A stretch of DNA of 64,000 nt from Laetmonice hystrix (Eukaryota), in NCBI GenBank assembly GCA_965235115.1, contig OZ249439.1, positions 7,440,001 to 7,504,000 on the forward strand, in the 5' to 3' direction. Below the pieces are notes generated by a model. The model had not been told where the DNA came from, searched no databases, and saw only the letters and a list, made by a program, of their open reading frames with translations. Below, one piece after another: positions 9,501 to 62,866 of this stretch (positions within the stretch are counted from its first letter, which is position 1; every line of letters begins with the position of its first letter). The position numbers and the translations under genes are program-made.

Positions 9501-11813
9501 TAGCTACAATAACTGACAAAATGTAGCGAGTTATTAAATAAAAGCATTGATTTCTTGAAATGTCTTCCGTCATCATTTGGCATCCTGGGTTGGGGAGGCC
9601 TGAGGCCGCTCTCAACCACCTCATCAGGTCTATATATCATAATGCGTTATCCACTTTACATTGATTAATGTTTATGCGTGTAACTCTTATAGGACCTTTA
9701 ACCTCTGCAAGTTTCTGAAACGTTCAAATGGATATCACGAGTACAGCCAACACGCCTGTCAGAAACTATAGGTATAGGCCAAATGACGGAACAGTGCCTT
9801 GCACTCCTAAAACTGACCGCCTTGATATGAGTCTGATTGTTGCGGAGGCGTAAAGCACCTATGCGAATCCAGACCCAAATTATTCACAACATTTTTTGGA
9901 GATTTCCGAACAATTAATGACTCCATACAAAACCGATCTCACAAAGTATTCAGGCACACACAGTCGAAGTAAACTTGTTCTTCTTTGGCTGATTCATTTT
10001 TCTCGCCTTTCTCTGGTGAAGTCACTTCTTCCTGCTTTTATCAGCCAAATGTAATTCAGTGTTTACACCTTATGGACCCCTCGCCATTATTGGGAGTTGG
10101 GCCTCCGTGCAAGCTAGCTGTCGCCTTCATTGGTGGTCCGGGTATGACCATATCACCTTCTCCTAGAGGATAGAGGATTATTAATCGAAATTTGGTACCT
10201 CGCAGTTATTTCGTGTGCTCGTCTCGACAAAATCGATTTGTGTATTCTTCAGAAAAGTCCGGGCCATCCGCAGGCCGGCAGCGGGGTACATTGGCTGATC
10301 TGTGATTATTGGCACCAGACGTCAGCCCCAAGTCATAGCGGTCCCCTCTCAGCGTCTGTTCATAGGGCCACCACGACGGCCCAGCCCCTGCACTGACCGC
10401 CTCCACAGTTTAATGGGCGCCCTTCAAGTGGCCCAAAAGACGTCGGGCCACGTTATTAAGTCATATTGATCCAGGCAGCCACTGGCGCAGACTTTGGTCA
10501 AGGGTCTTGACGCTGAAAGGCGTCTTTAGGAGAACGTGGGTCATTGGATTCCCAGTTTCCTGTAGTTGTAACAGGGTTTGGATTCGTTAAAAGGGCCACT
10601 CACTATACTAGCCAGCGGAAGTCTCAATCCATGCACGTCAGCAGACTCTTAGTCCTTTATTTGTCTGTCCTTTATTGGACTCAGGTGGCGTTTGTTTTAG
10701 AGACTTCTTTCCAAGTTAAGAGTTATTTAGCATATACGAAACACACGGTATGTTCTTCAAGAACAGGCCATTATAAGTGATATTGCGAACCCCAGTCATG
10801 GCGATAGTCTATGCAGGGTGCTTGGTAACCTTACGGCAGGTGGCCACTAACTACTAAATTAGGTGCAAGCTGGAGCCTGACAAGTTAACTAGATTTGTCA
10901 GGTTTACTCGAGAGAGAGGGCAGTATGCATTAAGTGGTGCTGGGTGCTGATAACCAGGCATGTCGCCTTCCCTCTGAGAGAGCGCCAAGTACGACCCATG
11001 TCGTGTGGTTCCCAAGTCAAGAGTTGTGGTCGTGGATTGGTGGTAATTTTACGTCTTGTCGGCAACTGTTGGCCATGCATCTTCAGTACAGGATCAAGTC
11101 ATTTTTTTATTTTTCTTCCCCATGGTGATTGACAAGATGATGCAGGGGAAACCCGAGCACCGGTCCAAAGCCCGATAAAGGCCAAGGGATCTTTTACGCG
11201 CAACACTGCAGGGACAGTGTTATACACGCCTTTGATTACCCAGGAGGCGACCGTGACAGCAGGGCAAACCCACGGAACGCTGAGTTAAACAAACCCTGTT
11301 CTCAAACCCACCGGGCCACCCACCCACCCACAAGTCAAAGGGACAAGGGCCTTCCCTCTCAGGACGTTCACAGACGCGCAAGAATTAAAATCTAAATATG
11401 ACAAAGAATCCTTGACACTGCAGGGGGTTCGGTGTACATAATCAAAGACTAGAACCAGTGCTGTCGCTGGCTTTCTGTGAACACAAAATCAATTGTTGTG
11501 CTACAGAGTTGGTTGGAGGAATTGAGCAAGGGCCTGCCACATAGGGCGGAAGTCAGGCGGGAGTGATTGTGTTGGGTGCCTGAGAGGACGTGGCGTCCTA
11601 CCGTCCCTGTGATAGAATCTGGCGGGAAGAACTCCGTAAATCCTGCATGACAAAACATGAGGATACTCCCTTTGAGGTGGGTGCCGGCCAGGGATGGACG
11701 TCACACGTCGCCTGTTTCATCAATGATCTTCTCAAACCAGCTTTGTGAAGTCAGGGTCACAAGGCTCACCCTCATTCCGCGTATTCCCCCATGATAACAT
11801 ACACACAAAACTC

Positions 11814-53559: not shown

Positions 53560-54172
53560 CTTACCGGGAGGCGGGAAAATAGCAGCATTTGAAGCTATCT
53601 GCCAGCTTGCACCTGCTGGCCTAACATTTCGACACACTTGCGCCACCTGGTGAGTATGACATTTCGACGGAAATACCCGTTGCGCATGCGGGAATTCCTG
53701 GGCGAAAATAGCAGCATTTGAAGGGTGTTGTTTACCTTGGGAACATAATTTGTCTTTTATTTATAGCGGTATTTACACTAGTTATCTCGACCAAACGCTC
53801 CATCCCTGAAATCAGCTGGCTAGCGGGGAACAGTGACAGGGTCGGTGACACAGTCTGTGTCGTGTGTGGCTAGCCGCCGTAGCCGGGACTGGTGACAGTC
53901 GTGTGGTGACACTGACACAAAGTGACACTGACAGTCTGTCAAAATCTCACCTGTTCCCGGCGGCGGTGGCGGCGGCTGCGACCTCGCCCCGCGGACGGCA
54001 GCCCGACCCAAAGTAAGGACGGGACTGACCCGATTGCGACCCACGGAGAATTAAAATGGAACCAGTTTAACATGAAGGAGTTATACGGTACCTAGATCTA
54101 CCAGGATAATTTAGAATAATGTCTTAAATTAACAGCGGGTGATTGCAGGCGTGGCAGATTGACCGATTCAAT
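53560..54172. promoter_or_regulatory. Divergent FANCF / kinase promoter
   Basis: E2F-type GGCGGGAAAA 53570-53579; 20-bp direct repeat gaaaatagcagcatttgaag (53575-53594 and 53704-53723); minus-strand donors near 53564 (GTAAGC) and 53950 (GTGAGA); GC-rich stretch. Confidence 0.55.
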
Positions 54173-57100
54173 ATGGCCCTCGCCCGGCACATGGCGATTG
54201 AACGGAGGTGAGTAGATCAATCAAGTTAAAGTGGATCATCGATCATGTTAATATTTGTCAAAGTCCCAGGTAAATATAACTGGTACTTTGGCTTTATTGT
54301 GTCTCCCGGCCCATTTCATGTTTATTTATTATGATACAAAGCAAGCGGCCAAATATGAAATACAAATTAAGTGAATCAATTCAAGATGAAATGATCTCTT
54401 TTCCAGTACCCGGTAGCCTGAAATAGCAGTATATAGTGCTGTTACTGGACGAGTACCAGGGCAGTCTTTTTCAAATAGATCTGTAAATGTACCGTACGGT
54501 ACCCCGGTAGTGAGAACCTCAAATTTTTCTTGTCCTTTTCCTGTCCAGTGCTGATTTCTGGTAAGAACAGTATTATTGCAAACAGAACGTTAAGCATCAT
54601 GCAGCTAGCCAGAGTTATAATTATAGGCTCACAATTATCGGATGAGAATGATGTCACATTCTTATACAGAGCACTGGTCTATGTTAATTTAGACATTTGT
54701 TTTTTTTTATTCAAGCATTTACCTGAATGATTAGCATGACAGACAAATATATCAGACATGAGAGTGAATGCAAAAATTTGGAAAATAGTTGGAAACCTTG
54801 TTTTTGAATTAGTACTTGGGTTCATGCAAGGTCAGAAAAAATCAGATTTCGAGATTTTTTGAAAATCAGAACACTCTCATCCCTGATAATATGCATATGA
54901 TATTATATTCACCTTTAAAACTGCTTGCATTATGTAGAGTCTTAAGTTTTTCTAAACAAAATTTGTAGGTCAATGATCGTTGATTCTTAAATTGCAGGCC
55001 TGCATGAGCCTAGATATTACATTATTTGGACACATGCATGGTAATTAGATAACTTTCCTAGAATGTGAGAGTGAGTCTTTAGCTTGAAAAACTCTAAATT
55101 GTGCAGAAAAACTTTTTAAAAAAGAACAGTAAAAATGGACACCTTTTATTTCACCCTTGATCCATATATTGTTTCAAGCAAACCAAGCGTGTGTTATATG
55201 ATGAATAGAACTCCTAAGAAAATGACATAAGCCAGTTGAATGAAGATCCATTGGAAATTTCCCCATTATAAAAAGCTATTATATATATTTGACATCTCAT
55301 TAATTAGGTCTCAAAATGTAGGTTAAAAATGTTAATTATTCAGTTCATTCATCTTATTTTTTCACCATTACATTGCATTGTCATGGCAGACTGCTAGAGC
55401 TTGCTCAGGACAATGAAGATTTGGATGCAGACATAACCAAGCTAGAGGATACATTCAAGCAACACAACACGTTGACATCAGATAAAGATAATCCATTGAC
55501 ACCTTTAAGGTAAATCTATGAGAAGTGACTCTTGTAATTTCCACCTTCTAGTGAAAAAATAAATCTAAGCCAATTTTTCTATTGAATAAACCTGAAAGTA
55601 ATTAGTTCTCAAATTATCAAAACGTTACTTTTAATAGATTTCTAGATAAAGCAAGTTGCAACAAAAAGAAACTTTTCTGCATTTCACATGATTCTCAGAA
55701 CAGCAGTTCTGACATGGCTAAGCCTAAAGGAGGCATGCTAGATACATTCATTACCAGAAATACATTGTGTCATTTCTGTTGTAGGAAGGAGATTGGAGGT
55801 TCAGTATGGAAGCAAGGATTACAAGGAAAACTTAAGGTTTACAGGAGTTCACAAGATGTACAGGACAATCCAAGACCTCTAAAAACAATGATACCAGTTT
55901 CAATCCTTCGAAACCCATTGACTTCTGGACAAAGGTCCAGATATGGGCTTACAAGTAAGGAGAAACCTGTAGAATCTATGAAATTTGCAGCAAATGGAAG
56001 CACACCTTCAGAAGAACGGGATCAAGGATCTAAGAAACAACCATTGAAGGGCAATACCCAAGCAGAAGGTAATGGAGATGTTTCCAGAGAAAAATCAATT
56101 AAGACTAAACCCACAGATTCCAAGGAAAGACAGGACGATGAGGGTGAAGTTTCTGTAGAGAAACGGATGCATGCATCTAGGACCACGTCTCGTAACCCAA
56201 GGATACATCAGAGATCACAGTCATTGAACAGACAGAGATCAAAATCACTAACAGATCCAGAAAAAACAAAGGTGGCAGATGATTGTGGGATTACTGAGCA
56301 AAAGCAGATTTCTTCAAACAGTCTGAGAAAGGGTAGGTCTTTCACAGGTCTTGCCTTAGGCACTTCGTCAGTGTCTGACTCCGAAGATGATCATTTATTT
56401 GATCCTAATTTTGAAAAGAAATCTTATGAAGAAAGAGTTACTGCTATGAAAGAAAAGGTACTGAAGAAAATGCTTCACAAGACAGACTTACAGAACAAAC
56501 TGAAAGACTTTAAGAAACACCCAAAAGTAAAAAAAGAAAAAGTGGATGTAACATCAGAAATACCACTGCAAACGAATAGTTCCAATGGACGGCGGAGAAC
56601 TGAAGCTCGGCATGCTTCTCTCAACAATAAATCTAATGACCAGATTGAATCAGTAAAGAGTGATAAGTCATCAACTCCTGAAGGGAAAGAAAGTAGTCCA
56701 GAGCAGTCAGAAGATCTAGAAGGCCTCCAGATCCAGGAGTGGTTGAGGGGCCTGGAACTGAAGGAAGCTAGCAGGTATACTGAGATATTACGAACTCATG
56801 GAGTCACCATGGACGGCGTGAGGAAACTCAAGGAGAAAGACCTCCAGGCCATGGGAATACATTCCTACCTTGTGCTCAACAGGCTTCTCGGTGGAATCAA
56901 AGACTTGAGGATTGCACAAGGATTACGTCGAGAAAGCAAGAGTGACACCAATAGCTACTCTAGTGGAACAAAAGACACCCTGTCCCTGCACTTTACTGAG
57001 AGCTCTGTCTCAAATAGTGAAAGGGAATGTAGTCCCTTGGATAATAAATCCAGGAAGTCAGAAACCCCAGGTGAAGAGGACTCTCAGGGAAAGCGAACAT

Positions 57101-60100
57101 TTTCAAAAACAAATTCCCCAAAGAAACCACCATGGGGCTCTGGTATTGGATCAAGATCCAACACAAAGATCAAACCAACTTCAAAACCATCATCTGAGAC
57201 GAGACCCAGAACATGTAAGCATTGTATAGAGACCATTTCATGAGTATTCAGTCTTGACCTCAAAGAGGTTTCAGGTTAGTTGTTAATTATGGCCTGTGAT
57301 GTTTGAGTCAATAATTACTGAATATGTTTTAAGTAAGCCCAAATGACTATTACAATGGGCCTACATAATAATTCAGTTCCAATGTTATTCCCTTAGGCCC
57401 GGGTTCCATGTCCAATGAAACCACCCAAAAACATCCACAAGCAGCATGGGGGAGGACTACACAGTCAGAGCCACAGGTTGGTAAATATAAGCCAGGCCTG
57501 GGCTTGACATGCACTGCTTTGTGTCTCTCAGACTTGGCAAACTTTTCTTTGTCTTGATCATGGACACTATTACTATTTTCCCATTCTTAGATATGCCATG
57601 TCCCAAAGAAAACTTTCTGTGTTTTGTTCTAGTCTTCTGAATCAAGTGAGGAGACCTTAGAAGATGAAGAGAGGACGGAAGTGAAAGTGTTGACGATTAA
57701 ATCTCGCCCACAGCCTCCAAGTCAAGAGACTAAATCTATCAGTTCTCAGCGAAGCCCACGCACTCGACTCTACCGTAGACCTGCACCCGTCCGCAAGAGC
57801 CTTGCACTCCCAGTGGCTTCATTTGATGTTCGAGATGATACCACAAGTTTATGTAAGTTAAACGGGGAGGATTACCATTAAAGTAAAATCTTTATGAAAT
57901 TGTAATTGTCTAGATACTTGGCAGATGGTCGTTATGTGGTGAAAGGAGATAAAAATGTTTGCCACTTATATATCAGTTTGATTTGATGTATTAGTAAAGT
58001 TGACATGATCATGTTATTTTAATTAGTCCTGAGATATTGCGTCAGGGATACCGAATAACGATAAGCAAATGATATCAAGCTTATGTAACCAGCCCTACTA
58101 TAAAAGTGGAGTAAGTAGTATATGAAAAGTGAAATTTTATTCAGGCTGCCTTGACATGTTCACATCTCAGAGACCTACATTATGTCTCCCAGGAGATGAA
58201 AAAAATCACATACTCACATATAAGTGACATAGTAATTTCCATTCCCAGTAGGTGGAGCAGAGGGGAATAAGTTAAAAGTTCCGGATCAGGATAAAGATAA
58301 AAGTTTACAAGGATCACCACAACAAGATGTGTCGCCACGTACTACCACAGCCCAGACAGCATTCCAGGCCATGGAATCTCAGGTGAGAACTACCTCAGGA
58401 TCCATGGCACCTGTCGACTCCCATTCAATATGCTGTGGTATTGTAATTTGATATATCTAGAGGTCACCAGGGAACAGTGGTCTATCAACATTGTGGTCTG
58501 TTTACTGTGGTCTAATTAACACAACTTGCCCATCAGCCACTTGTCCTGACACCAAGTCTGCATTAAGGATCATTCTAATCCTGACACCAACTCTCCATTA
58601 CGGATCATTCTAACCTTGTCTTAATTCTCCTTCAGATTCACATCCTACAGGAGCAGGTGGCTGTCACCGGGGACCAGGCGACTACAGACATGATCTGCCA
58701 ACTGCAGCAGCAGCTTGGACAGCTTCAGAACGCTGTGATCCAAGACCATACCACCACCAGCACCACCAGAAGCACCACTCCAGGCATCATAAAAACAACC
58801 CAGGGTAACAAACAAACTGGTCCTGGAAACCTCATCACGGCAGCATTACAAGGTAACCTCCGCCCAGTCAGCAGCAGAGTAGCACCACCACCACAACCAC
58901 CATCACCACCACCAGTACCACCACCACCGATCCCACAGGACCCACTTCAGGACCAAGATCACCATCAGACATTTCCAGGTGATTTTCTTCAAGCTAACCA
59001 TCAGTCAAAGAGATCACCGAATGGTCTATTGTTTTATCTTGTGTAAAATAATCATGAAAACGTTTTAGATGTAAAAGGGCATACCAAAACAGCTTCTGTG
59101 AGAATAGAAAGGTGACTAGAAGATAACTCCAACTTGTTTTGCCACAGCCTACACAACAACTATTGATGTGATTTGGTGGTGAGAGGGTTCTTTATTGATG
59201 AGCTAAAAGAGTGTTTACCAGGGTCCCTGTACACAAGCATATTTTGTAGTCAGAATTTAAACTTCCATTATCTAGATGAGGACTGGTCAGATCATGAGGG
59301 AAATGTTGTCTCTCCGACGAAACCCATGACCAGGCCAACGTCTGGCTCCACTGTAAGTGGAGGTCAACGGAGGTCACAGGGGTCAACTCCTTCCAAGGTC
59401 AAAGGATCCATACTCAGCCTGTCGATGAGCAAACAACAGATCCTGAAGGAAGTTCGCAAACAAACTGAAGAACACCGACGTACAGTCAGGTGAAGGAACT
59501 AATAAATCACAAAAACGTTTTGTCCATTGCTGTGACAAAGTCAGGTGACTGTTTAACAGCGTCACTCTTAACTCTGTTTAACAGCGTCACTCTTAACTCC
59601 TCTTATCTATAACTCAATAACCAGAACGTTTGGCTCTATCTTCTTGGGAAAACTTATTGTTACATGATGTTAAGAATAATGTTTGCGTCCTGTTGTAGAA
59701 ATATTCATAATCTGATTAACTTTGTTTTAGACATCTTGAGTCAGAGTTGTCACGGCTTAAACACAAAGATCCACTGAAGGCATGTGAGATTCCCGCAGAG
59801 GAGGTGATCTTTGATGAGGAAGGTGGGTGAAATATAAAGGACTTAATTTTGATCAGATACACCAGTAAATTGAAGGTTAACAGAACCATGTAGATAGCGT
59901 ACCATTATTCGTGTGCCTGATGTTTTTTCCCTTCCAGATTTAATTGGAGAGGGAGCCTTCTCCAAGGTCTTTCACGGAGTGTTTCAAGGGTCAGAGGTTG
60001 CGATTAAGAGATTAAACGTACCACTCAACTCTCAGGACAAAAACTATTTCACAGCAGAGGTACACCATTTCATACCATGTTTAAGAGTATAAGAATATGC

Positions 60101-62535
60101 AGTCACTATAAGTTCCGATTATTTACTCTTGGATAGCTAAATTTTTGCCTCAGTCACCTCCGTGTAAATGTGCCTAAATTGTTCTAGGTGAACCTACTGC
60201 GTGAATTGAGACATCCTCGAGTTGTTCTACTGATGGGCGTGTGTACCACATCACAGCGCCCCCTAATGGTTCTTGAGTACATGAACGCAGGCAGTCTCTA
60301 TGGTTATCTCCACGACAAAAACAAGTAAGGATAACCCACTGTGGAGAGGTATCCACAGCAAGCTGTGTTCAATCAGCTCATTGTTTATATCTTTCTCGTC
60401 CTTTCTTAATTTGTTGTCCGTGTCTGACGTTCGAATGATATTTAACCTACTCTTCCATCAGACCATCCCTGGATCATGCAGCCTATTATTTAGTGGCACG
60501 TGACATTGCCTTAGGCATGAACTACTTACACCGGCATCGACCAACCGTCCTTCATCTTGACCTCAAGTCGATGAATGTCCTCCTCACCAACCACCTTCAT
60601 GCCAAGATTGCAGACTTTGGTTTCTCAAAGCTCAGGTAAAAACATGCAACGGAGAACTGCAGTTTCTTGAAAGAGTGTGACTGCATTTCATCCATGTCAT
60701 GTCTTTCTACGTACGAAATAAAACACAAATTTGAATCCTGAATAAGAGCTGAGCCATTTCCGCATGAAATGTGAGTACGTCAAGCTATTGATATACCTTA
60801 AAATTTCTCTGAAACTCTTCACCAAATAATGAAATGATGGAATGTAGCCCATATTGGTATATAGCAGGATAGAAAGCTGACCATCCTGGAACATGATTTC
60901 AGTAAAAATTAATCTTTTTTCCCCATCGGATTTGACAATCAGACATGATGCAGAAGTTGTGATGTCAGAGAGAGGAGGCTTGAAGGGGACACCCTCGTGG
61001 ATGGCTCCAGAACTCCTAGACACAGGTGACATCACACCCAAGGCAGACGTGTACAGCTATAGCATCATCTTGTGGGAGATGGTGACACGCAGCCACCCGT
61101 ACCCAGGCTGTTCCATGTTCCAGGTCTGTAAAACCCACATAAACACCAGCCAGCATGTCAACTGGGACAATGTGCTTCCATTTCAGGCTTTTCTATCATG
61201 GTCCGAGATTTTGAATTGAAAGCTCTTCAGGGAATATTTTTCTAACTTTGTTCTATCTTTTACTTTTAACTTCGTCTTTAACATGCATGTGCTTGCCTTG
61301 AAGATAACTTGGCCGACATGGTGTCAAATCAGCAGTACTCTCTCACTTAGTCACCATTACTCTGAAACCCACATAGATATTGAATGTAGACTTTGTTTAG
61401 GTGTTGGAGCGTGTTCGTACCAGAAAGCGACCTACCATACCCACGGATTGCCCTGATGGACTGGTTGCACTCATCATTCAGTGCTGGGATCATCTCCCAA
61501 CAAAACGTCCAACATTTGAGGTAAGCATGCCTTTCTAGTTCTCTCCGTCATGATGAAACATGTGGTGTAAACTGTATGAGTAGAAACGTTTTCTAGTGTT
61601 AGCAAACTGGTGTTGATGCGTTGGTACATGATCTGGTATGTTGATAAAAGTAGGTTTCCAAACTTTGCTTCTAGTTTTAGAGTTCCCTGCCACAATACAC
61701 ACAATTCAAAACAGAATTACTCAAGAAATTCCGTTTTATTACTTATTAGATTATCTTGAACAAACTGGAAGAGCTCCAGTTCCCCAGGGAGTGGAAGTCT
61801 CTGTTTGCTGCAGCAGGAATACCCCAAGATGCACTTGATGACCTCGAGGCCACAAGGACCCTAATTAACATTGTCACAGAGACTGTGTCGGGAGATATCC
61901 TCGATACAAACGGTTCTGTTGTGAACCATTGTCAATCTGACACTGACCCAAGATCCAAGGAAAGAACGAAAGCGTCAAGGTCACGGGTGTCATCAGATCC
62001 AAGGTCAAACACTCCCTACCAGGACAGTGCAAGCGTCCCCCGTGGGAAAGGCAAACGGACATCTGTGAAGAGTTCCGCTGGAGATAAAAATTCCTCGGCT
62101 GCAAGGCTGCCTCCTCCGGCACCACCCCCACCAATGGCGCCCCCACCACCACCACCACCACCGTTACCACCACAACAGGTGCTGCCATCTAGCACACAGC
62201 CACCTGCGACAACCGACTTTTTGCTGGCATTGAAAGCAGGCATTCAAGATGTCAGACTGAAGCGAACTGAGAGAGACCCCGATAAGACAAACCAGCCATC
62301 CACGGGTTTCCTTATCGCAGCCTCTGAGCTGCAGCAGAGGAAGAATGAGCTGAAGCCCGTCCAACATCCACACCCGAGCTGTCTACAGGACCTGAATGGA
62401 GTCAGTAAGGGCACAATCAGTGGACTGACCGACGTCCTCAGACGGGCTGTGAATGAACGCAGGGTGGCACTCAACGAGTACAGCAGCAGTGATCAATCAT
62501 GTACAGACAGCGTCTGGTCGGTGGGCGACTGGTAA
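54173..62535 (+). CDS. Coiled-coil / SAM / TKL protein kinase with a C-terminal WASP-like GBD-polyproline-WH2-WH2-C-A module, about 1395 aa, 15 coding exons
   Basis: Exons 54173-54207, 55390-55509, 55785-57214, 57397-57476, 57633-57852, 58249-58382, 58636-58978, 59276-59489, 59731-59822, 59938-60059, 60188-60324, 60462-60635, 60943-61123, 61401-61520, 61750-62535; all GT-AG, phases consistent, 4188 nt. SAM: IQEWLRGLELKEASRYTEILRTHGVTMDGVRKLKEKDLQAMGI. Kinase: IGEGAFSKV, VAIK, FTAEV, HLDLKSMN, DFG, GTPSWMAPE, DVYSYSIILWEM, CWDHLPTKRPTF. The 5' exons are less certain than the kinase and C-terminal exons. Confidence 0.85.
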
Positions 62536-62547
62536 CTCCTGCTCACT

Positions 62548-62866
62548 CAGTAAGTGATTGGTAATCATTAATTAACACTGGTTAGTGAGTGATTGGTAAA
62601 CAGTAATAAACACTGGTTAGTGAGTGATTGGTAACCAGTAATGAACACTGGTTAGTGAGTGATCGGTAAACAGTAATGAACACTGGCCAGCGAGTGATTG
62701 GTAACCAGTACTGACCACTGGTCCGTTAAAAGTGATTGGTAACCAGTAAGGAACACTGACCAGCAAGTGATTTGTCATCAGTCATCAACACTGCTCAGTT
62801 AGTGAATGGTAACCAGTAAGGAACACTGGGCAAGTGATATCGGTACCCAGTACTGACCTCTGGTAG
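62548..62866. repeat. 35-bp degenerate tandem repeat, about 9 copies, directly after the kinase stop codon
   Basis: Unit about gagtgattggtaaccagtaatgaacactggttagt; period 35 between 62587 and 62622. Confidence 0.9.

What the first reader, a model, noticed from the sequence alone, without database searches (positions are those of the whole stretch)
59938..62535. TKL kinase fused to a complete WASP-like actin-nucleation tail: candidate kinase-type Arp2/3 activator
Seen: the kinase ends RPTFE|IILNKLEEL across the 61520/61750 junction, and the same exon continues without a stop through four elements. These are a polyproline tract (about 62110-62170, [21 protein letters not shown]), two WH2-like motifs (FLLALKAGIQDVRLKRT; IAASELQQRKNELKPV), an amphipathic central helix (GLTDVLRRAVNERRVAL, 62419-62472), and a Ser/acidic tail ending SSSDQSCTDSVWSVGDW-stop. 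Known: PRD-WH2-C-A with a terminal Trp is the VCA module by which WASP, N-WASP and WAVE activate Arp2/3; N-WASP has two WH2 motifs; the WASP C-A linker reads HSSDE. Inference: one polypeptide joins SAM oligomerisation, kinase signalling and actin nucleation. I know of no characterised animal NPF with an integral kinase, but cannot check novelty here. The acidic tail is weaker than in WASP and may need Ser phosphorylation.
Basis: partly seen in the sequence, partly recalled or inferred. Interest (0 to 1): 0.9.

Follow-up and report, generated by a model that had tools for sequence, protein, structure and literature searches.

The report
Kinase fused to a WASP-like tail
This animal gene joins a SAM domain and an intact protein kinase to the C-terminal half of a WASP-type actin regulator; the fusion is conserved but unstudied across molluscs, echinoderms, hemichordates and amphioxus, and it may link kinase signalling directly to Arp2/3 actin assembly.

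Summary
Six exons with canonical splice sites give one open frame from the kinase glycine loop to the stop. The last exon (61750-62535) holds the end of the kinase domain and the whole tail, so the fusion is not a gene-model artefact.

The tail is homologous to the C-terminal half of WASP/N-WASP:
- The post-CRIB GBD helices match genuine WASPs (hhalign P 1.5e-12; the top PDB hits are WASP GBDs).
- The connector helix and Trp tail match the WASP CA region (P 7e-6; best column shuffle 9.7 against 28.1).
- The whole tail aligns collinearly with 11 genuine WASP tails (P 3.6e-12).

- The WH2-like motifs are degenerate. They show no Pfam, pattern or HMM support, and V alone gives P 0.14. An actin docking test gave weak support (0.48 against a best control of 0.02).
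- The tail is only weakly acidic.
- The conserved Trp is W256 ("WS"), not the terminal W261.

There is no CRIB motif and no WH1 domain. The gene is single-copy. Orthologues with SAM, kinase and tail occur in molluscs, echinoderms, hemichordates and cephalochordates, all annotated "uncharacterized". No paper describing the family was found.

My verdict is a new WASP-family-like subfamily whose Arp2/3 activity is untested. The scan did not find this on other DNA.

The parts
55660..55866 (+). Conserved N-terminal coding segment inside the large exon (open frame 55606-57240)
   Evidence: tblastn matches to Haliotis residues 48-76 and Mytilus residues 8-79
56728..56910 (+). SAM domain
   Evidence: Pfam SAM_2 E 1.6e-7 and SAM_1 E 4.6e-6 on window:55606-57240 residues 375-435. 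The same domain is found in orthologues.
59179..59490 (+). Conserved pre-kinase exon (...SKQQILKEVRKQTEEHRR...); exact borders not determined
   Evidence: tblastn matches to Patella, Haliotis and Ptychodera. L001 has the equivalent exon.
59726..59821 (+). Exon just upstream of the kinase glycine loop (approximate borders)
   Evidence: tblastn matches to 8 of 9 named orthologues
59938..60059 (+). Kinase exon with GEGAFS glycine loop and VAIK lysine
   Evidence: AG/GT borders, in frame. About 70% identical to orthologues.
60188..60324 (+). Kinase exon (alpha-C Glu, hinge)
60462..60635 (+). Kinase exon with catalytic loop HLDLKSMN and DFG
   Evidence: Pfam Pkinase E 2.8e-12
60943..61123 (+). Kinase exon with activation segment and APE
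   Evidence: Pfam PK_Tyr_Ser-Thr E 1.3e-11
61401..61520 (+). Kinase exon ending ...KRPTFE
61750..61776 (+). Last residues of the kinase domain (IILNKLEEL), at the start of the tail exon
   Evidence: In orthologue P0018 the Pfam kinase match runs to profile position 258 of 258 at residue 1343. That is inside the segment LSTLESLSFPPDW, which starts the tail. The same exon start is seen in L001 and L002.
61777..61893 (+). WASP-type GBD/autoinhibitory helices without a CRIB motif (QFPREWKSLFAAAGIPQDALDDLEATRTLINIVTETVSG)
   Evidence: Profile A3 against the PDB: the top 7 hits are all WASP, N-WASP or PAK GBDs (2k42_A E 0.0039, 1ej5_A E 0.0085). Pfam PBD is sub-threshold in 16 of 25 members, matching profile positions 25-53. 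hhalign against the WASP post-CRIB region gives P 1.5e-12. AF2 predicts helices at 13-21, 26-30 and 32-51 with pLDDT about 80.
62107..62172 (+). Proline-rich region ([22 protein letters not shown])
   Evidence: Read directly from the sequence. Conserved in position across the family.
62215..62268 (+). Motif 1: WH2-like helix plus LKRT (DFLLALKAGIQDVRLKRT); present in only a subset of species
   Evidence: A relaxed WH2 pattern matches; the strict pattern fails. Aligned to the Cobl WH2 in 3tu5_B at E 0.003, with polyproline contributing. Placed on WASP WH2-1 in the collinear hhalign. AF2 helix 157-166.
62305..62361 (+). Motif 2: family-wide ...ASELxxQKxxLKP motif, a degenerate WH2 candidate
   Evidence: L194 and L201 are invariant. 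Placed on WASP WH2-2 by hhalign, but V alone gives P 0.14. AF2 helix 191-200.
62365..62394 (+). Conserved PHPxQLxDL motif preceding the C helix
   Evidence: Near-invariant in the family. Aligns with LPDL/PDI preceding the C helix of the Plasmodiophora and Acytostelium WASPs.
62422..62472 (+). C (connector) helix GLTDVLRRAVNERRVAL
   Evidence: Meets the published C-domain pattern in 18 of 20 members (pattern from PMC3298513). R71, R72 and A74 of alignment A4 are invariant. hhalign against the Plasmodiophora WASP C region scores 60.2, against a maximum of 20.2 in 100 shuffles. CA against WASP CA gives P 7e-6.
62473..62535 (+). Ser-rich, weakly acidic tail with the invariant Trp-Ser (W256 at 62515-62517), a non-conserved terminal W261, and the stop at 62533-62535
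   Evidence: W and S are invariant in 13 of 13 complete tails. Acid minus basic over the last 25 residues is 2 here and -1 to 6 in the family, against 7 to 19 in intact WASPs.

Best explanation
The stretch is the 3' half of a single-copy gene. The gene is this animal's orthologue of a conserved, uncharacterised bilaterian family with the architecture SAM domain, TKL-type Ser/Thr kinase, and a WASP-derived tail.

The tail keeps these WASP elements, in WASP order:
- the autoinhibitory GBD helices, without the Cdc42-binding CRIB motif;
- a proline-rich region;
- one or two degenerate WH2-like motifs;
- a well-conserved connector (C) helix;
- a Ser-rich, weakly acidic end with an invariant Trp.

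Most likely mechanism, which is inferred and not shown:
1. As in WASP, the GBD helices hold the C helix in an autoinhibited latch.
2. Because there is no CRIB, the latch is opened by something other than Cdc42. Candidates are phosphorylation by the adjacent kinase, possibly in trans within SAM-mediated oligomers, or SH3/profilin ligands of the proline-rich region.
3. The freed C helix and Trp tail engage the Arp2/3 complex, while the WH2-like/LKP motifs contact actin monomers. Branched-actin assembly is then triggered where the kinase is active.
4. Phosphorylation of the Ser-rich tail could supply the negative charge that the sequence lacks.

Shown here: the gene structure, an intact set of kinase catalytic motifs, homology of the GBD and CA parts to WASP, conservation across phyla, and absence of CRIB and WH1.

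Inferred: the latch, Arp2/3 and actin binding, and regulation by phosphorylation.
For: Gene structure:
- One clean spliced frame; the kinase end and the tail share one exon, as they do in two other species.
- Catalytic residues are intact: VAIK, alpha-C Glu, HLD..N, DFG, APE. The closest solved kinases are CTR1 (E 2e-52) and DLK.

Homology to WASP:
- GBD helices: all top PDB hits are WASP/N-WASP/PAK GBDs. Pfam PBD positions 25-53 match in 16 of 25 members. hhalign gives P 1.5e-12. This genome's own genuine N-WASP post-CRIB half scores only 19.4 bits on Pfam PBD, so the sub-threshold scores are what a CRIB-less GBD should give.
- The whole tail is collinear with 11 genuine WASP tails, 224 columns, P 3.6e-12.
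- CA alone gives P 7e-6, score 28.1 against a column-shuffle maximum of 9.7.
- The C region against the Plasmodiophora WASP scores 60.2, against a shuffle maximum of 20.2.
- The tail profile independently retrieved a genuine WASP (WH1 + PBD + 2 WH2) at E 1.6e-4 out of 1.84 billion proteins.
- Protist WASPs share the family's IPPDWRKLFQSAGI, LPDI, MQRRGNMRED and GWSDSE features.

Conservation:
- The invariant residues (C-helix hydrophobics, RR, A, Trp-Ser) sit at the positions that define the WASP C and A regions.

Independent leads:
- ESM Atlas nearest clusters are WASL for the whole tail (0.87) and WHAMM/WH2 clusters for residues 146-261 (0.87).
- Actin plus residues 150-216: ipSAE 0.48 (runs 0.60, 0.48, 0.44) against a best control of 0.02. 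The tool's verdict was 'weak support'. The runs agree in at least 53% of contacts and partner pLDDT is at least 45. The mark was reached by 51 of 78 solved complexes and 2 of 108 mismatches, but passes at or below 0.60 are rated weak.

Distribution:
- The SAM + kinase + tail architecture occurs in molluscs, echinoderms, hemichordates and cephalochordates.
- The gene tree follows the species tree.
Against: - The V region is not statistically WH2-like. There is no Pfam WH2 hit. The strict WASP-family WH2 pattern matches 0 of 20 family members. A WASP-WH2 HMM does no better than on shuffled tails. V against V gives P 0.14.
- The better WH2-like motif 1 is absent from the named deuterostome and mollusc orthologues.
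- The tail is far less acidic than any intact WASP in the comparison.
- The AF2 model of the tail gives no sign that the GBD helices and C helix pack together. Its fold matches are weak: the WASP GBD 2k42 at Z 3.2 is tied with unrelated helices.
- The profile of motif 2 to the C-terminus found no PDB chain at E <= 10.
- No RNA data exist for this organism.
- No binding or activity has been measured anywhere.
Confidence: 0.5

Rival explanations
1. The tail is WASP-derived, but it has been re-purposed. The GBD helices and C helix survive as an intramolecular latch or docking module that regulates the kinase, in the manner of the PAK autoinhibitory switch, or that recruits partners. The degenerate WH2 and weakly acidic end no longer activate Arp2/3. 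At most they bind Arp2/3 or actin as a localisation signal.
For: - The two best-conserved tail segments are exactly the two that bind each other in autoinhibited WASP.
- The V region is not significant.
- Acidity is low.
- The GBD helices directly abut the kinase C-lobe.
- A PAK GBD (4mit_E, FPPEWREKLIKAGL) is among the top PDB hits.
Against: - The invariant Trp-Ser near the C-terminus and the invariant RR doublet are hallmarks of Arp2/3 engagement rather than of GBD binding. That rests on established knowledge of WASP C/A regions and the pattern in PMC3298513.
- The whole order GBD, PRD, V, C, A is retained over a very long time.
- Actin docking passed its controls, though weakly.
- The AF2 model gives no positive support for any latch either.
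Confidence: 0.33
2. The resemblance to WASP is convergent or due to chance. On this reading the tail is a disordered linker with short linear motifs (an SH3-binding polyproline, amphipathic helices, an aromatic C-terminus) unrelated to WASP.
For: - No Pfam family passes its cut-off on the tail.
- Fold searches are weak.
- Polyproline inflates several of the scores.
Against: - With the polyproline removed, the GBD part (P 1.5e-12) and the CA part (P 7e-6) remain well above the column-shuffle, reversal and cross-region controls.
- The order of the elements is identical to WASP from end to end.
- The seven best PDB hits for the GBD-like profile are all GBDs.
Confidence: 0.05
3. The fusion is a gene-model artefact, and the tail belongs to a separate neighbouring gene.
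For: No RNA runs exist for this organism.
Against: - The tail exon starts with the last nine residues of the kinase domain, in frame, behind a canonical acceptor.
- The same arrangement is seen in L001 and L002.
- RefSeq models of at least ten species carry the same architecture.
Confidence: 0.02

Closest known systems
WASP / N-WASP (WASL)
   Same: The tail keeps the post-CRIB GBD helices, the proline-rich region, the position of the V motifs, the C helix and a Trp near the C-terminus, all in the same order. It is collinear with 11 genuine WASP tails by hhalign (P 3.6e-12). The GBD part and the CA part are each significant alone.
   Different: - There is no WH1 domain, no basic region and no CRIB.
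- The N-terminus is SAM plus a TKL kinase.
- The WH2 motifs are degenerate.
- The A region is Ser-rich and only weakly acidic.
- The Trp sits 5-9 residues from the end, followed by an invariant Ser.
WAML proteins of Entamoeba (Kollmar et al. 2012, PMC3298513)
   Same: WAML is a WASP-family subfamily in which a different N-terminal domain is joined to a CRIB-less autoinhibition domain (WAID), a proline-rich region and VCA. Its authors also concluded that release from the WAID must be GTPase-independent.
   Different: WAML carries an IMD domain rather than SAM plus kinase. It is restricted to Entamoeba and has recognisable WH2 motifs. No sequences were available here for a direct comparison.
WAWH proteins (WASP without WH1; amoebae, Apusozoa, Anolis; PMC3298513)
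   Same: Both have GBD, PRD and VCA without a WH1 domain. The family's tail looks closest to protist-type WASP tails, sharing PPxW+xLF, LPDL and RR.xM..ED...GWS features.
   Different: WAWH proteins keep the CRIB-containing GBD and have no kinase. Membership was not tested because no sequences were available.
PAK kinases (CRIB/autoinhibitory switch plus STE20 kinase)
   Same: Both have a kinase and GBD-type helices in one polypeptide. The FPPEW+ start of the helices matches an Entamoeba PAK GBD (4mit_E).
   Different: - In PAK the GBD is N-terminal and carries a CRIB; here it is C-terminal and has none.
- The kinase here is TKL-like, with CTR1 and DLK as best matches, not STE20.
- PAKs have no PRD-V-C-A continuation.
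ACK1/TNK2 (recalled from general knowledge, not tested)
   Same: ACK1/TNK2 has an N-terminal SAM domain, a kinase, a Cdc42-binding element and a proline-rich tail, and it is functionally linked to WASP.
   Different: ACK is a tyrosine kinase with an SH3 domain and a true CRIB, and it has no C helix or Trp tail. It is not among the 60 best PDB matches of the kinase domain.
CTR1 / MLK-DLK type TKL kinases
   Same: The kinase domain is most similar to Arabidopsis CTR1 (3ppz, E 2e-52) and to MAP3K12/DLK (E 4.5e-43). All catalytic motifs are present.
   Different: None of these kinases has a WASP-like tail.

Membership tests
WASP family of Arp2/3 nucleation-promoting factors (PRD + VCA; Kollmar 2012, PMC3298513; Campellone 2023, PMC10330494) | Proline-rich region N-terminal to the VCA | tested here: met
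   [22 protein letters not shown] lies at 62107-62172 and is conserved in position in orthologues.
WASP family of Arp2/3 nucleation-promoting factors | [quoted passage not shown] | tested here: not met
   - The strict pattern matches 0 of 20 family members, against 6 of 11 genuine WASPs.
- Pfam WH2 gives no hit.
- A WASP-WH2 HMM scores at most 1.2 bits, against a shuffled maximum of 2.0.
- V against V by hhalign gives P 0.14.
- The window's motif 1 is a near miss (FLLALK...LKRT, 7-residue linker) and matches only a relaxed pattern.
WASP family of Arp2/3 nucleation-promoting factors | V region binds G-actin | tested here: inconclusive
   Docking of actin (L016:1492-2619) with window:62197-62397 gave ipSAE 0.48 against a best control of 0.02. 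The verdict was 'weak support'. The runs agree in at least 53% of contacts and partner pLDDT is at least 45. Passes at or below 0.60 are rated weak. A Cobl WH2 chain aligned at E 0.003, with polyproline contributing.
WASP family of Arp2/3 nucleation-promoting factors | C (connector) helix: three large hydrophobics at i, i+4 and i+8, then an R/K doublet, then a terminal hydrophobic | tested here: met
   - L-TDV-L-RRA-V-NE-RR-VA-L in the window. The pattern is met in 18 of 20 family members, against 8 of 11 WASPs.
- CA against WASP CA by hhalign gives P 7e-6, with a shuffle maximum of 9.7 against 28.1.
- Against the Plasmodiophora WASP C region the score is 60.2, with a shuffle maximum of 20.2.
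WASP family of Arp2/3 nucleation-promoting factors | Trp (or another aromatic) at or near the C-terminus | tested here: met
   Trp-Ser is invariant in 13 of 13 complete tails, 5-9 residues from the end.
WASP family of Arp2/3 nucleation-promoting factors | Strongly acidic A region | tested here: not met
   Acid minus basic over the last 25 residues is 2 in the window and -1 to 6 in the family, against 7 to 19 in intact WASPs. The region is Ser/Thr-rich instead, with 4-8 of the last 25 residues.
WASP family of Arp2/3 nucleation-promoting factors | Activates the Arp2/3 complex | not testable with these tools
   This needs biochemistry, or a docking run with the seven-subunit complex, which exceeds the size limit.
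WASP/N-WASP subfamily proper | N-terminal WH1 domain | tested here: not met
   Pfam on six full-length orthologues finds only SAM and kinase domains. The window's upstream exons encode SAM.
WASP/N-WASP subfamily proper | CRIB motif (ISxPxxFxHxxHVG) in front of the GBD helices | tested here: not met
   There is no CRIB in 17 family members or in the window's three forward frames from 54001 to 62600. The same pattern finds it in 4 of 5 genuine WASPs.
WASP/WAWH/WAML autoinhibition domain (post-CRIB GBD helices, 'WAID') | Sequence homology to the helices that sequester the C helix | tested here: met
   - Against the PDB, 2k42_A scores E 0.0039 and 1ej5_A E 0.0085, and the top 7 hits are all GBDs.
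- Pfam PBD positions 25-53 match in 16 of 25 members.
- hhalign gives P 1.5e-12.
- Helices are predicted at 13-51.
WASP/WAWH/WAML autoinhibition domain | GBD helices physically bind the C helix | tested here: inconclusive
   In the fold searches of the AF2 tail model no match spans both segments, so a packed latch is not predicted. The alignment is shallow and there is a 170-residue disordered linker, so this is not evidence against a latch.
TKL-group protein kinases | Kinase fold with intact catalytic motifs; closest relatives in the TKL group | tested here: met
   - Pfam PK_Tyr_Ser-Thr matches the exons and scores E about 1e-62 on orthologues.
- VAIK, HLDLKSMN, DFG and APE are all present.
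- The best informatively named PDB matches are CTR1 and DLK.
PAK family | CRIB-containing N-terminal regulatory region plus an STE20-type kinase | tested here: not met
   There is no CRIB. The GBD helices are C-terminal to the kinase. The kinase matches TKL and TK chains best, and no PAK or STE20 kinase is among the top 60.

The most novel reading that the evidence does not exclude
This would be an unrecognised subfamily of the WASP family, present in many invertebrate phyla. In it a SAM-oligomerised Ser/Thr kinase replaces the WH1 domain and the CRIB as the regulatory input. The kinase opens a CRIB-less GBD:C latch and charges the Ser-rich 'A' region by phosphorylation. The result is a GTPase-independent, phosphorylation-gated Arp2/3 activator built into a kinase.
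Probability: 0.3. Interest if true: 0.85.

Novelty: new variant of a known kind. Interest (0 to 1): 0.72.

Why it matters
All characterised WASP-family factors are scaffolds that receive signals from GTPases, lipids, SH3 adaptors or kinases acting in trans. None carries its own catalytic signalling domain. The 2012 census of the family (PMC3298513) and a 2023 review (PMC10330494) list none with a kinase.

If this family engages Arp2/3, it would be a direct, single-polypeptide link between a MAP3K-like kinase and branched-actin nucleation. It would also be a natural example of a CRIB-less GBD:C latch that must be opened without a GTPase.

The family is old. The split between the mollusc and deuterostome copies follows the species tree. 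It is present in tractable embryos (sea stars, amphioxus, hemichordates, oysters and scallops) and appears absent from the usual models, which may explain why it was missed.

Even if Arp2/3 activation has been lost, the family shows how a WASP regulatory module can be re-used to control a kinase.

Tried and rejected
- **Pfam and single-sequence PDB searches on the tail exon.** Pfam gave no family. The PDB search gave only polyproline noise.
- **Profile of motif 2 to the C-terminus against PDB and Pfam.** Nothing was found.
- **Genome-wide Pfam WH2 and PBD searches.** Neither reports the window. They did locate the genuine N-WASP-like gene on contig C13.
- **Structure route.** The AF2 model of the tail has mean pLDDT 62.7 and pTM 0.25. 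Foldseek's only PDB match is the WASP GBD 2k42 at E 5.9. In the VIA search it scores Z 3.2, tied with many unrelated short helical chains. No match joins the GBD and C helices. The fold evidence therefore neither confirms the GBD fold nor supports a latch.
- **RNA evidence.** No RNA run holds the stretch. The three holders look like DNA runs of one sample.
- **Shared exon border as a sign of exon capture from N-WASP.** The N-WASP post-CRIB exon starts about 8 residues before the LKALF motif. The tail exon starts 15 residues before WKSLF. The borders are not the same, so the idea was dropped.
- **WASP-type WH2 HMM built from 13 genuine motifs.** It matches only half-motifs in the family, at background level.
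- **Paralogues.** The GBD and CA profiles find only this locus in the genome.
- **Literature.** Six searches for a kinase joined to WH2, VCA or WAID found no description of the family. The oyster kinome paper does not mention it.
- **Actin docking.** It passed only in the band the tool rates as weak, so it is reported as weak support and not as a finding.

Full report
**1. What is in the sequence**

Reading 59800-62700 and splicing by eye gives six exons: 59938-60059, 60188-60324, 60462-60635, 60943-61123, 61401-61520 and 61750-62535. Each has an AG acceptor and each internal one a GT donor. Joined, they give one frame of 505 codons without a stop.

The frame starts at the kinase glycine loop (GEGAFS). 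It carries VAIK, the alpha-C Glu, HLDLKSMN, DFG and APE, so the kinase looks catalytically competent.

The last exon begins with IILNKLEEL. In orthologues this lies inside the Pfam kinase match; in P0018 the profile runs to position 258 of 258 at residue 1343, within LSTLESLSFPPDW. The end of the kinase domain and the whole tail are therefore encoded by one exon. The same holds in two other species' genomic contigs, L001 and L002. The fusion is not an annotation artefact.

Upstream exons in the window:
- A large exon holds a SAM domain at 56728-56910.
- Conserved exons lie at about 59179-59490 and 59726-59821.

**2. The family**

The tail exon finds orthologous open-frame fragments at E 1e-16 to 1e-22. 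A profile of the tails searched against 1.84 billion representatives gave 96 hits at E <= 1e-3 and 51 at E <= 1e-10.

Full-length members all have the architecture SAM, PK_Tyr_Ser-Thr kinase, then tail. They come from these groups:

| Group | Genera |
|---|---|
| Gastropods | Haliotis, Patella, Pomacea |
| Bivalves | Mytilus, Potamilus, Solemya, Pecten, Mizuhopecten, Argopecten |
| Sea stars | Patiria, Asterias, Acanthaster |
| Brittle star | Amphiura |
| Crinoids | Antedon, Anneissia |
| Hemichordate | Ptychodera |
| Amphioxus | three Branchiostoma species |

Every source name is 'uncharacterized', 'hypothetical' or an automatic kinase label such as 'pakF-like', 'splB-like' or 'BCK1/SLK1/SSP31-like'.

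A kinase-domain tree separates molluscs from deuterostomes as the species tree does. The window sits on a long branch between them. This indicates vertical descent from before the protostome-deuterostome split. No vertebrate, arthropod or nematode appeared among the named hits, but the searches were not exhaustive.

In this genome the gene is single-copy.

**3. Is the tail WASP-like?**

*GBD helices.*
- A 25-sequence profile of the first 55 tail residues hits only GBDs at the top of the PDB list: WASP 2k42_A (E 0.0039), 1ej5_A (E 0.0085) and 1cee_B, an Entamoeba PAK (4mit_E), and three N-WASP chains.
- Pfam PBD is the commonest weak hit, in 16 of 25 members, always to profile positions 25-53, the part after the CRIB.
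- This genome's own N-WASP-like gene scores only 19.4 bits for the same half of the profile. Sub-threshold scores are therefore what a CRIB-less GBD should give.
- Against an alignment of 11 genuine WASP/N-WASP proteins retrieved, hhalign gives P 1.5e-12 for this part alone.
- No CRIB motif exists in 17 family members or in the window.
- This agrees with the companion first-stage note s1-317224.

*Whole tail.*
- The family profile aligns with the WASP tails in one collinear stretch from the GBD helices to the C-terminal Trp: 224 columns, probability 97.6%, P 3.6e-12.
- Motif 1 falls on WASP WH2-1 and motif 2 on WH2-2. The conserved helix falls on the C region and the Trp on the WASP Trp.

*Contribution of each part.* Polyproline inflates such scores, so I cut it out and tested the parts separately.

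| Comparison | Score | P | Controls |
|---|---|---|---|
| Residues 146-261 vs WASP VCA | 29.9 | 9e-5 | column-shuffle max 18.4; reversed 12.0; cross-region 13.8 and 6.9 |
| CA part vs WASP CA | 28.1 | 7e-6 | column-shuffle max 9.7 |
| V part vs WASP V | 10.1 | 0.14 | column-shuffle max 9.9 |

*Independent hit on a genuine WASP.*
- The tail profile retrieved a Plasmodiophora protein with WH1, PBD and two WH2 motifs at E 1.6e-4.
- Against that protein the best hhalign segment is precisely its C region. It scores 60.2, against a maximum of 20.2 in 100 shuffles.
- Protist WASPs share features with the family that animal N-WASPs have lost. Acytostelium, for example, has IPPDWRKLFQSAGI, LPDI...LAMMQRRGNMRED and GWSDSE.

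*Published definitions (PMC3298513).*
- The C-domain pattern is met in 18 of 20 members.
- The WH2 pattern is met in none, against 6 of 11 WASPs.
- A WH2 HMM built from 13 genuine motifs finds only half-motifs, at background level.
- Motif 1, the better WH2 look-alike (F[LM][DE]x[LI]K.G.....LK..), occurs in the window, in L002 and in some unnamed contigs. It does not occur in the named orthologues.
- Motif 2 (ASELxxQKxxLKP) is universal in the family but lacks the WH2 hydrophobic triad.
- The tail after the C helix has an invariant Trp-Ser. It is Ser-rich and only mildly acidic: -1 to 6 against 7 to 19 in intact WASPs.
- The window's final W261 is not conserved.

*Other lines of evidence.*
- ESM Atlas feature searches place the whole tail nearest WASL clusters (0.87). 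They place residues 146-261 nearest WHAMM/WH2 clusters (0.87). These are leads only.
- Docking this genome's cytoplasmic actin with residues 150-216 gave ipSAE 0.48 against a best control of 0.02. That passes the tool's mark, but in the band it rates as weak. It may also reflect memory of solved WH2-actin complexes.
- The AF2 model predicts helices exactly at the GBD, motif 1, motif 2 and C segments.
- Fold searches on that model are uninformative and show no packed GBD:C unit.

**4. Mechanism**

*Shown:*
- an intact TKL kinase, nearest to CTR1 and DLK;
- a SAM domain;
- a WASP-homologous, CRIB-less GBD;
- a proline-rich region;
- a WASP-homologous connector helix with a Trp tail.

*Inferred:*
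- The GBD helices latch the C helix, as in WASP.
- Release is GTPase-independent. It may come from the adjacent kinase or from ligands of the proline-rich region.
- The freed CA engages Arp2/3 while the LKP motifs contact actin.
- Phosphorylation of the Ser-rich tail compensates for its low acidity.
- SAM oligomerisation raises potency.

*Probabilities:*

| Reading | Probability |
|---|---|
| Arp2/3-engaging module | about 0.5 |
| WASP-derived module kept only as a kinase-regulatory or docking latch | about 0.33 |
| Chance resemblance | about 0.05 |
| Gene-model artefact | about 0.02 |
| Unassigned | about 0.10 |

**5. Comparison and novelty**

The nearest precedent in concept is the Entamoeba WAML subfamily: IMD + CRIB-less WAID + PRD + VCA (PMC3298513).

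The family fails membership of WASP/N-WASP proper because it has no WH1 and no CRIB. Of the general WASP-family hallmarks, it fails two: a canonical WH2 and a strongly acidic A region. It meets the others: the PRD, the C helix, the Trp and the GBD helices.

No paper in the searched library describes a kinase joined to such a tail. The sequences are in public databases but are uncharacterised.

I rate it a new variant of a known kind. Interest is fairly high, but function is untested.

Noticed in passing
window 62547-62864: A 35-bp tandem repeat with 9 copies at 77% match starts 12 bases after the stop codon, in the presumed 3' UTR.
   Followed up: partly
G000:C13:23300100-23302250 (-), loci L009, L015, L029, L033: This is the genome's genuine N-WASP-like gene. 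It has a CRIB exon ([24 protein letters not shown]), an intron, and a post-CRIB exon (LDPSLKALFDQVGISENQLQDQETAQFIYDFIDKHGG). These are followed by a PRD, two canonical WH2 motifs, a C helix (GIAGALARALASRAKKVQ) and an A region (DSDEEEDEEDVEDDDDWDD).
   Followed up: partly
G000:C4:8022502-8022555 (+), locus L006, about 520 kb beyond the window on the same contig: A 277-residue open frame has a Pfam WH2 match over the cut-off (24.1 bits; IIDRLLNDIRKGFSLRKT). It is followed by tandem AEESLQSARSHTT repeats.
   Followed up: no
L001 10880-11107; P0003-P0016 C-termini: Most orthologues have an intron inside the C helix, right after ...ILKK. Their open-frame fragments end in ILKKV plus junk, and L001's last exon at 11021-11107 encodes VVNGRRIVIETKESLDTSINESSWSDYED. 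The window and L002 have lost this intron.
   Followed up: partly
window 58657-59046 (+): A second proline tract (APPPQPPSPPPVPPPPIP) lies in an open frame between the SAM exon and the kinase exons. It follows a Q/L-rich segment that resembles an L001 exon. The exon borders were not determined.
   Followed up: no
PDB 9p9u_A against P0054:755-1015: The best PDB match of the family's kinase domain is a 678-residue chain labelled 'Epidermal growth factor receptor'. It scores E 4e-55 in two stretches, ahead of CTR1. The label looks odd for a TKL-like kinase.
   Followed up: no
kinase-domain tree: The window's protein sits on a long branch (0.59) outside both the mollusc and the deuterostome clades. 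Its host is probably from a phylum not represented among the named orthologues.
   Followed up: partly
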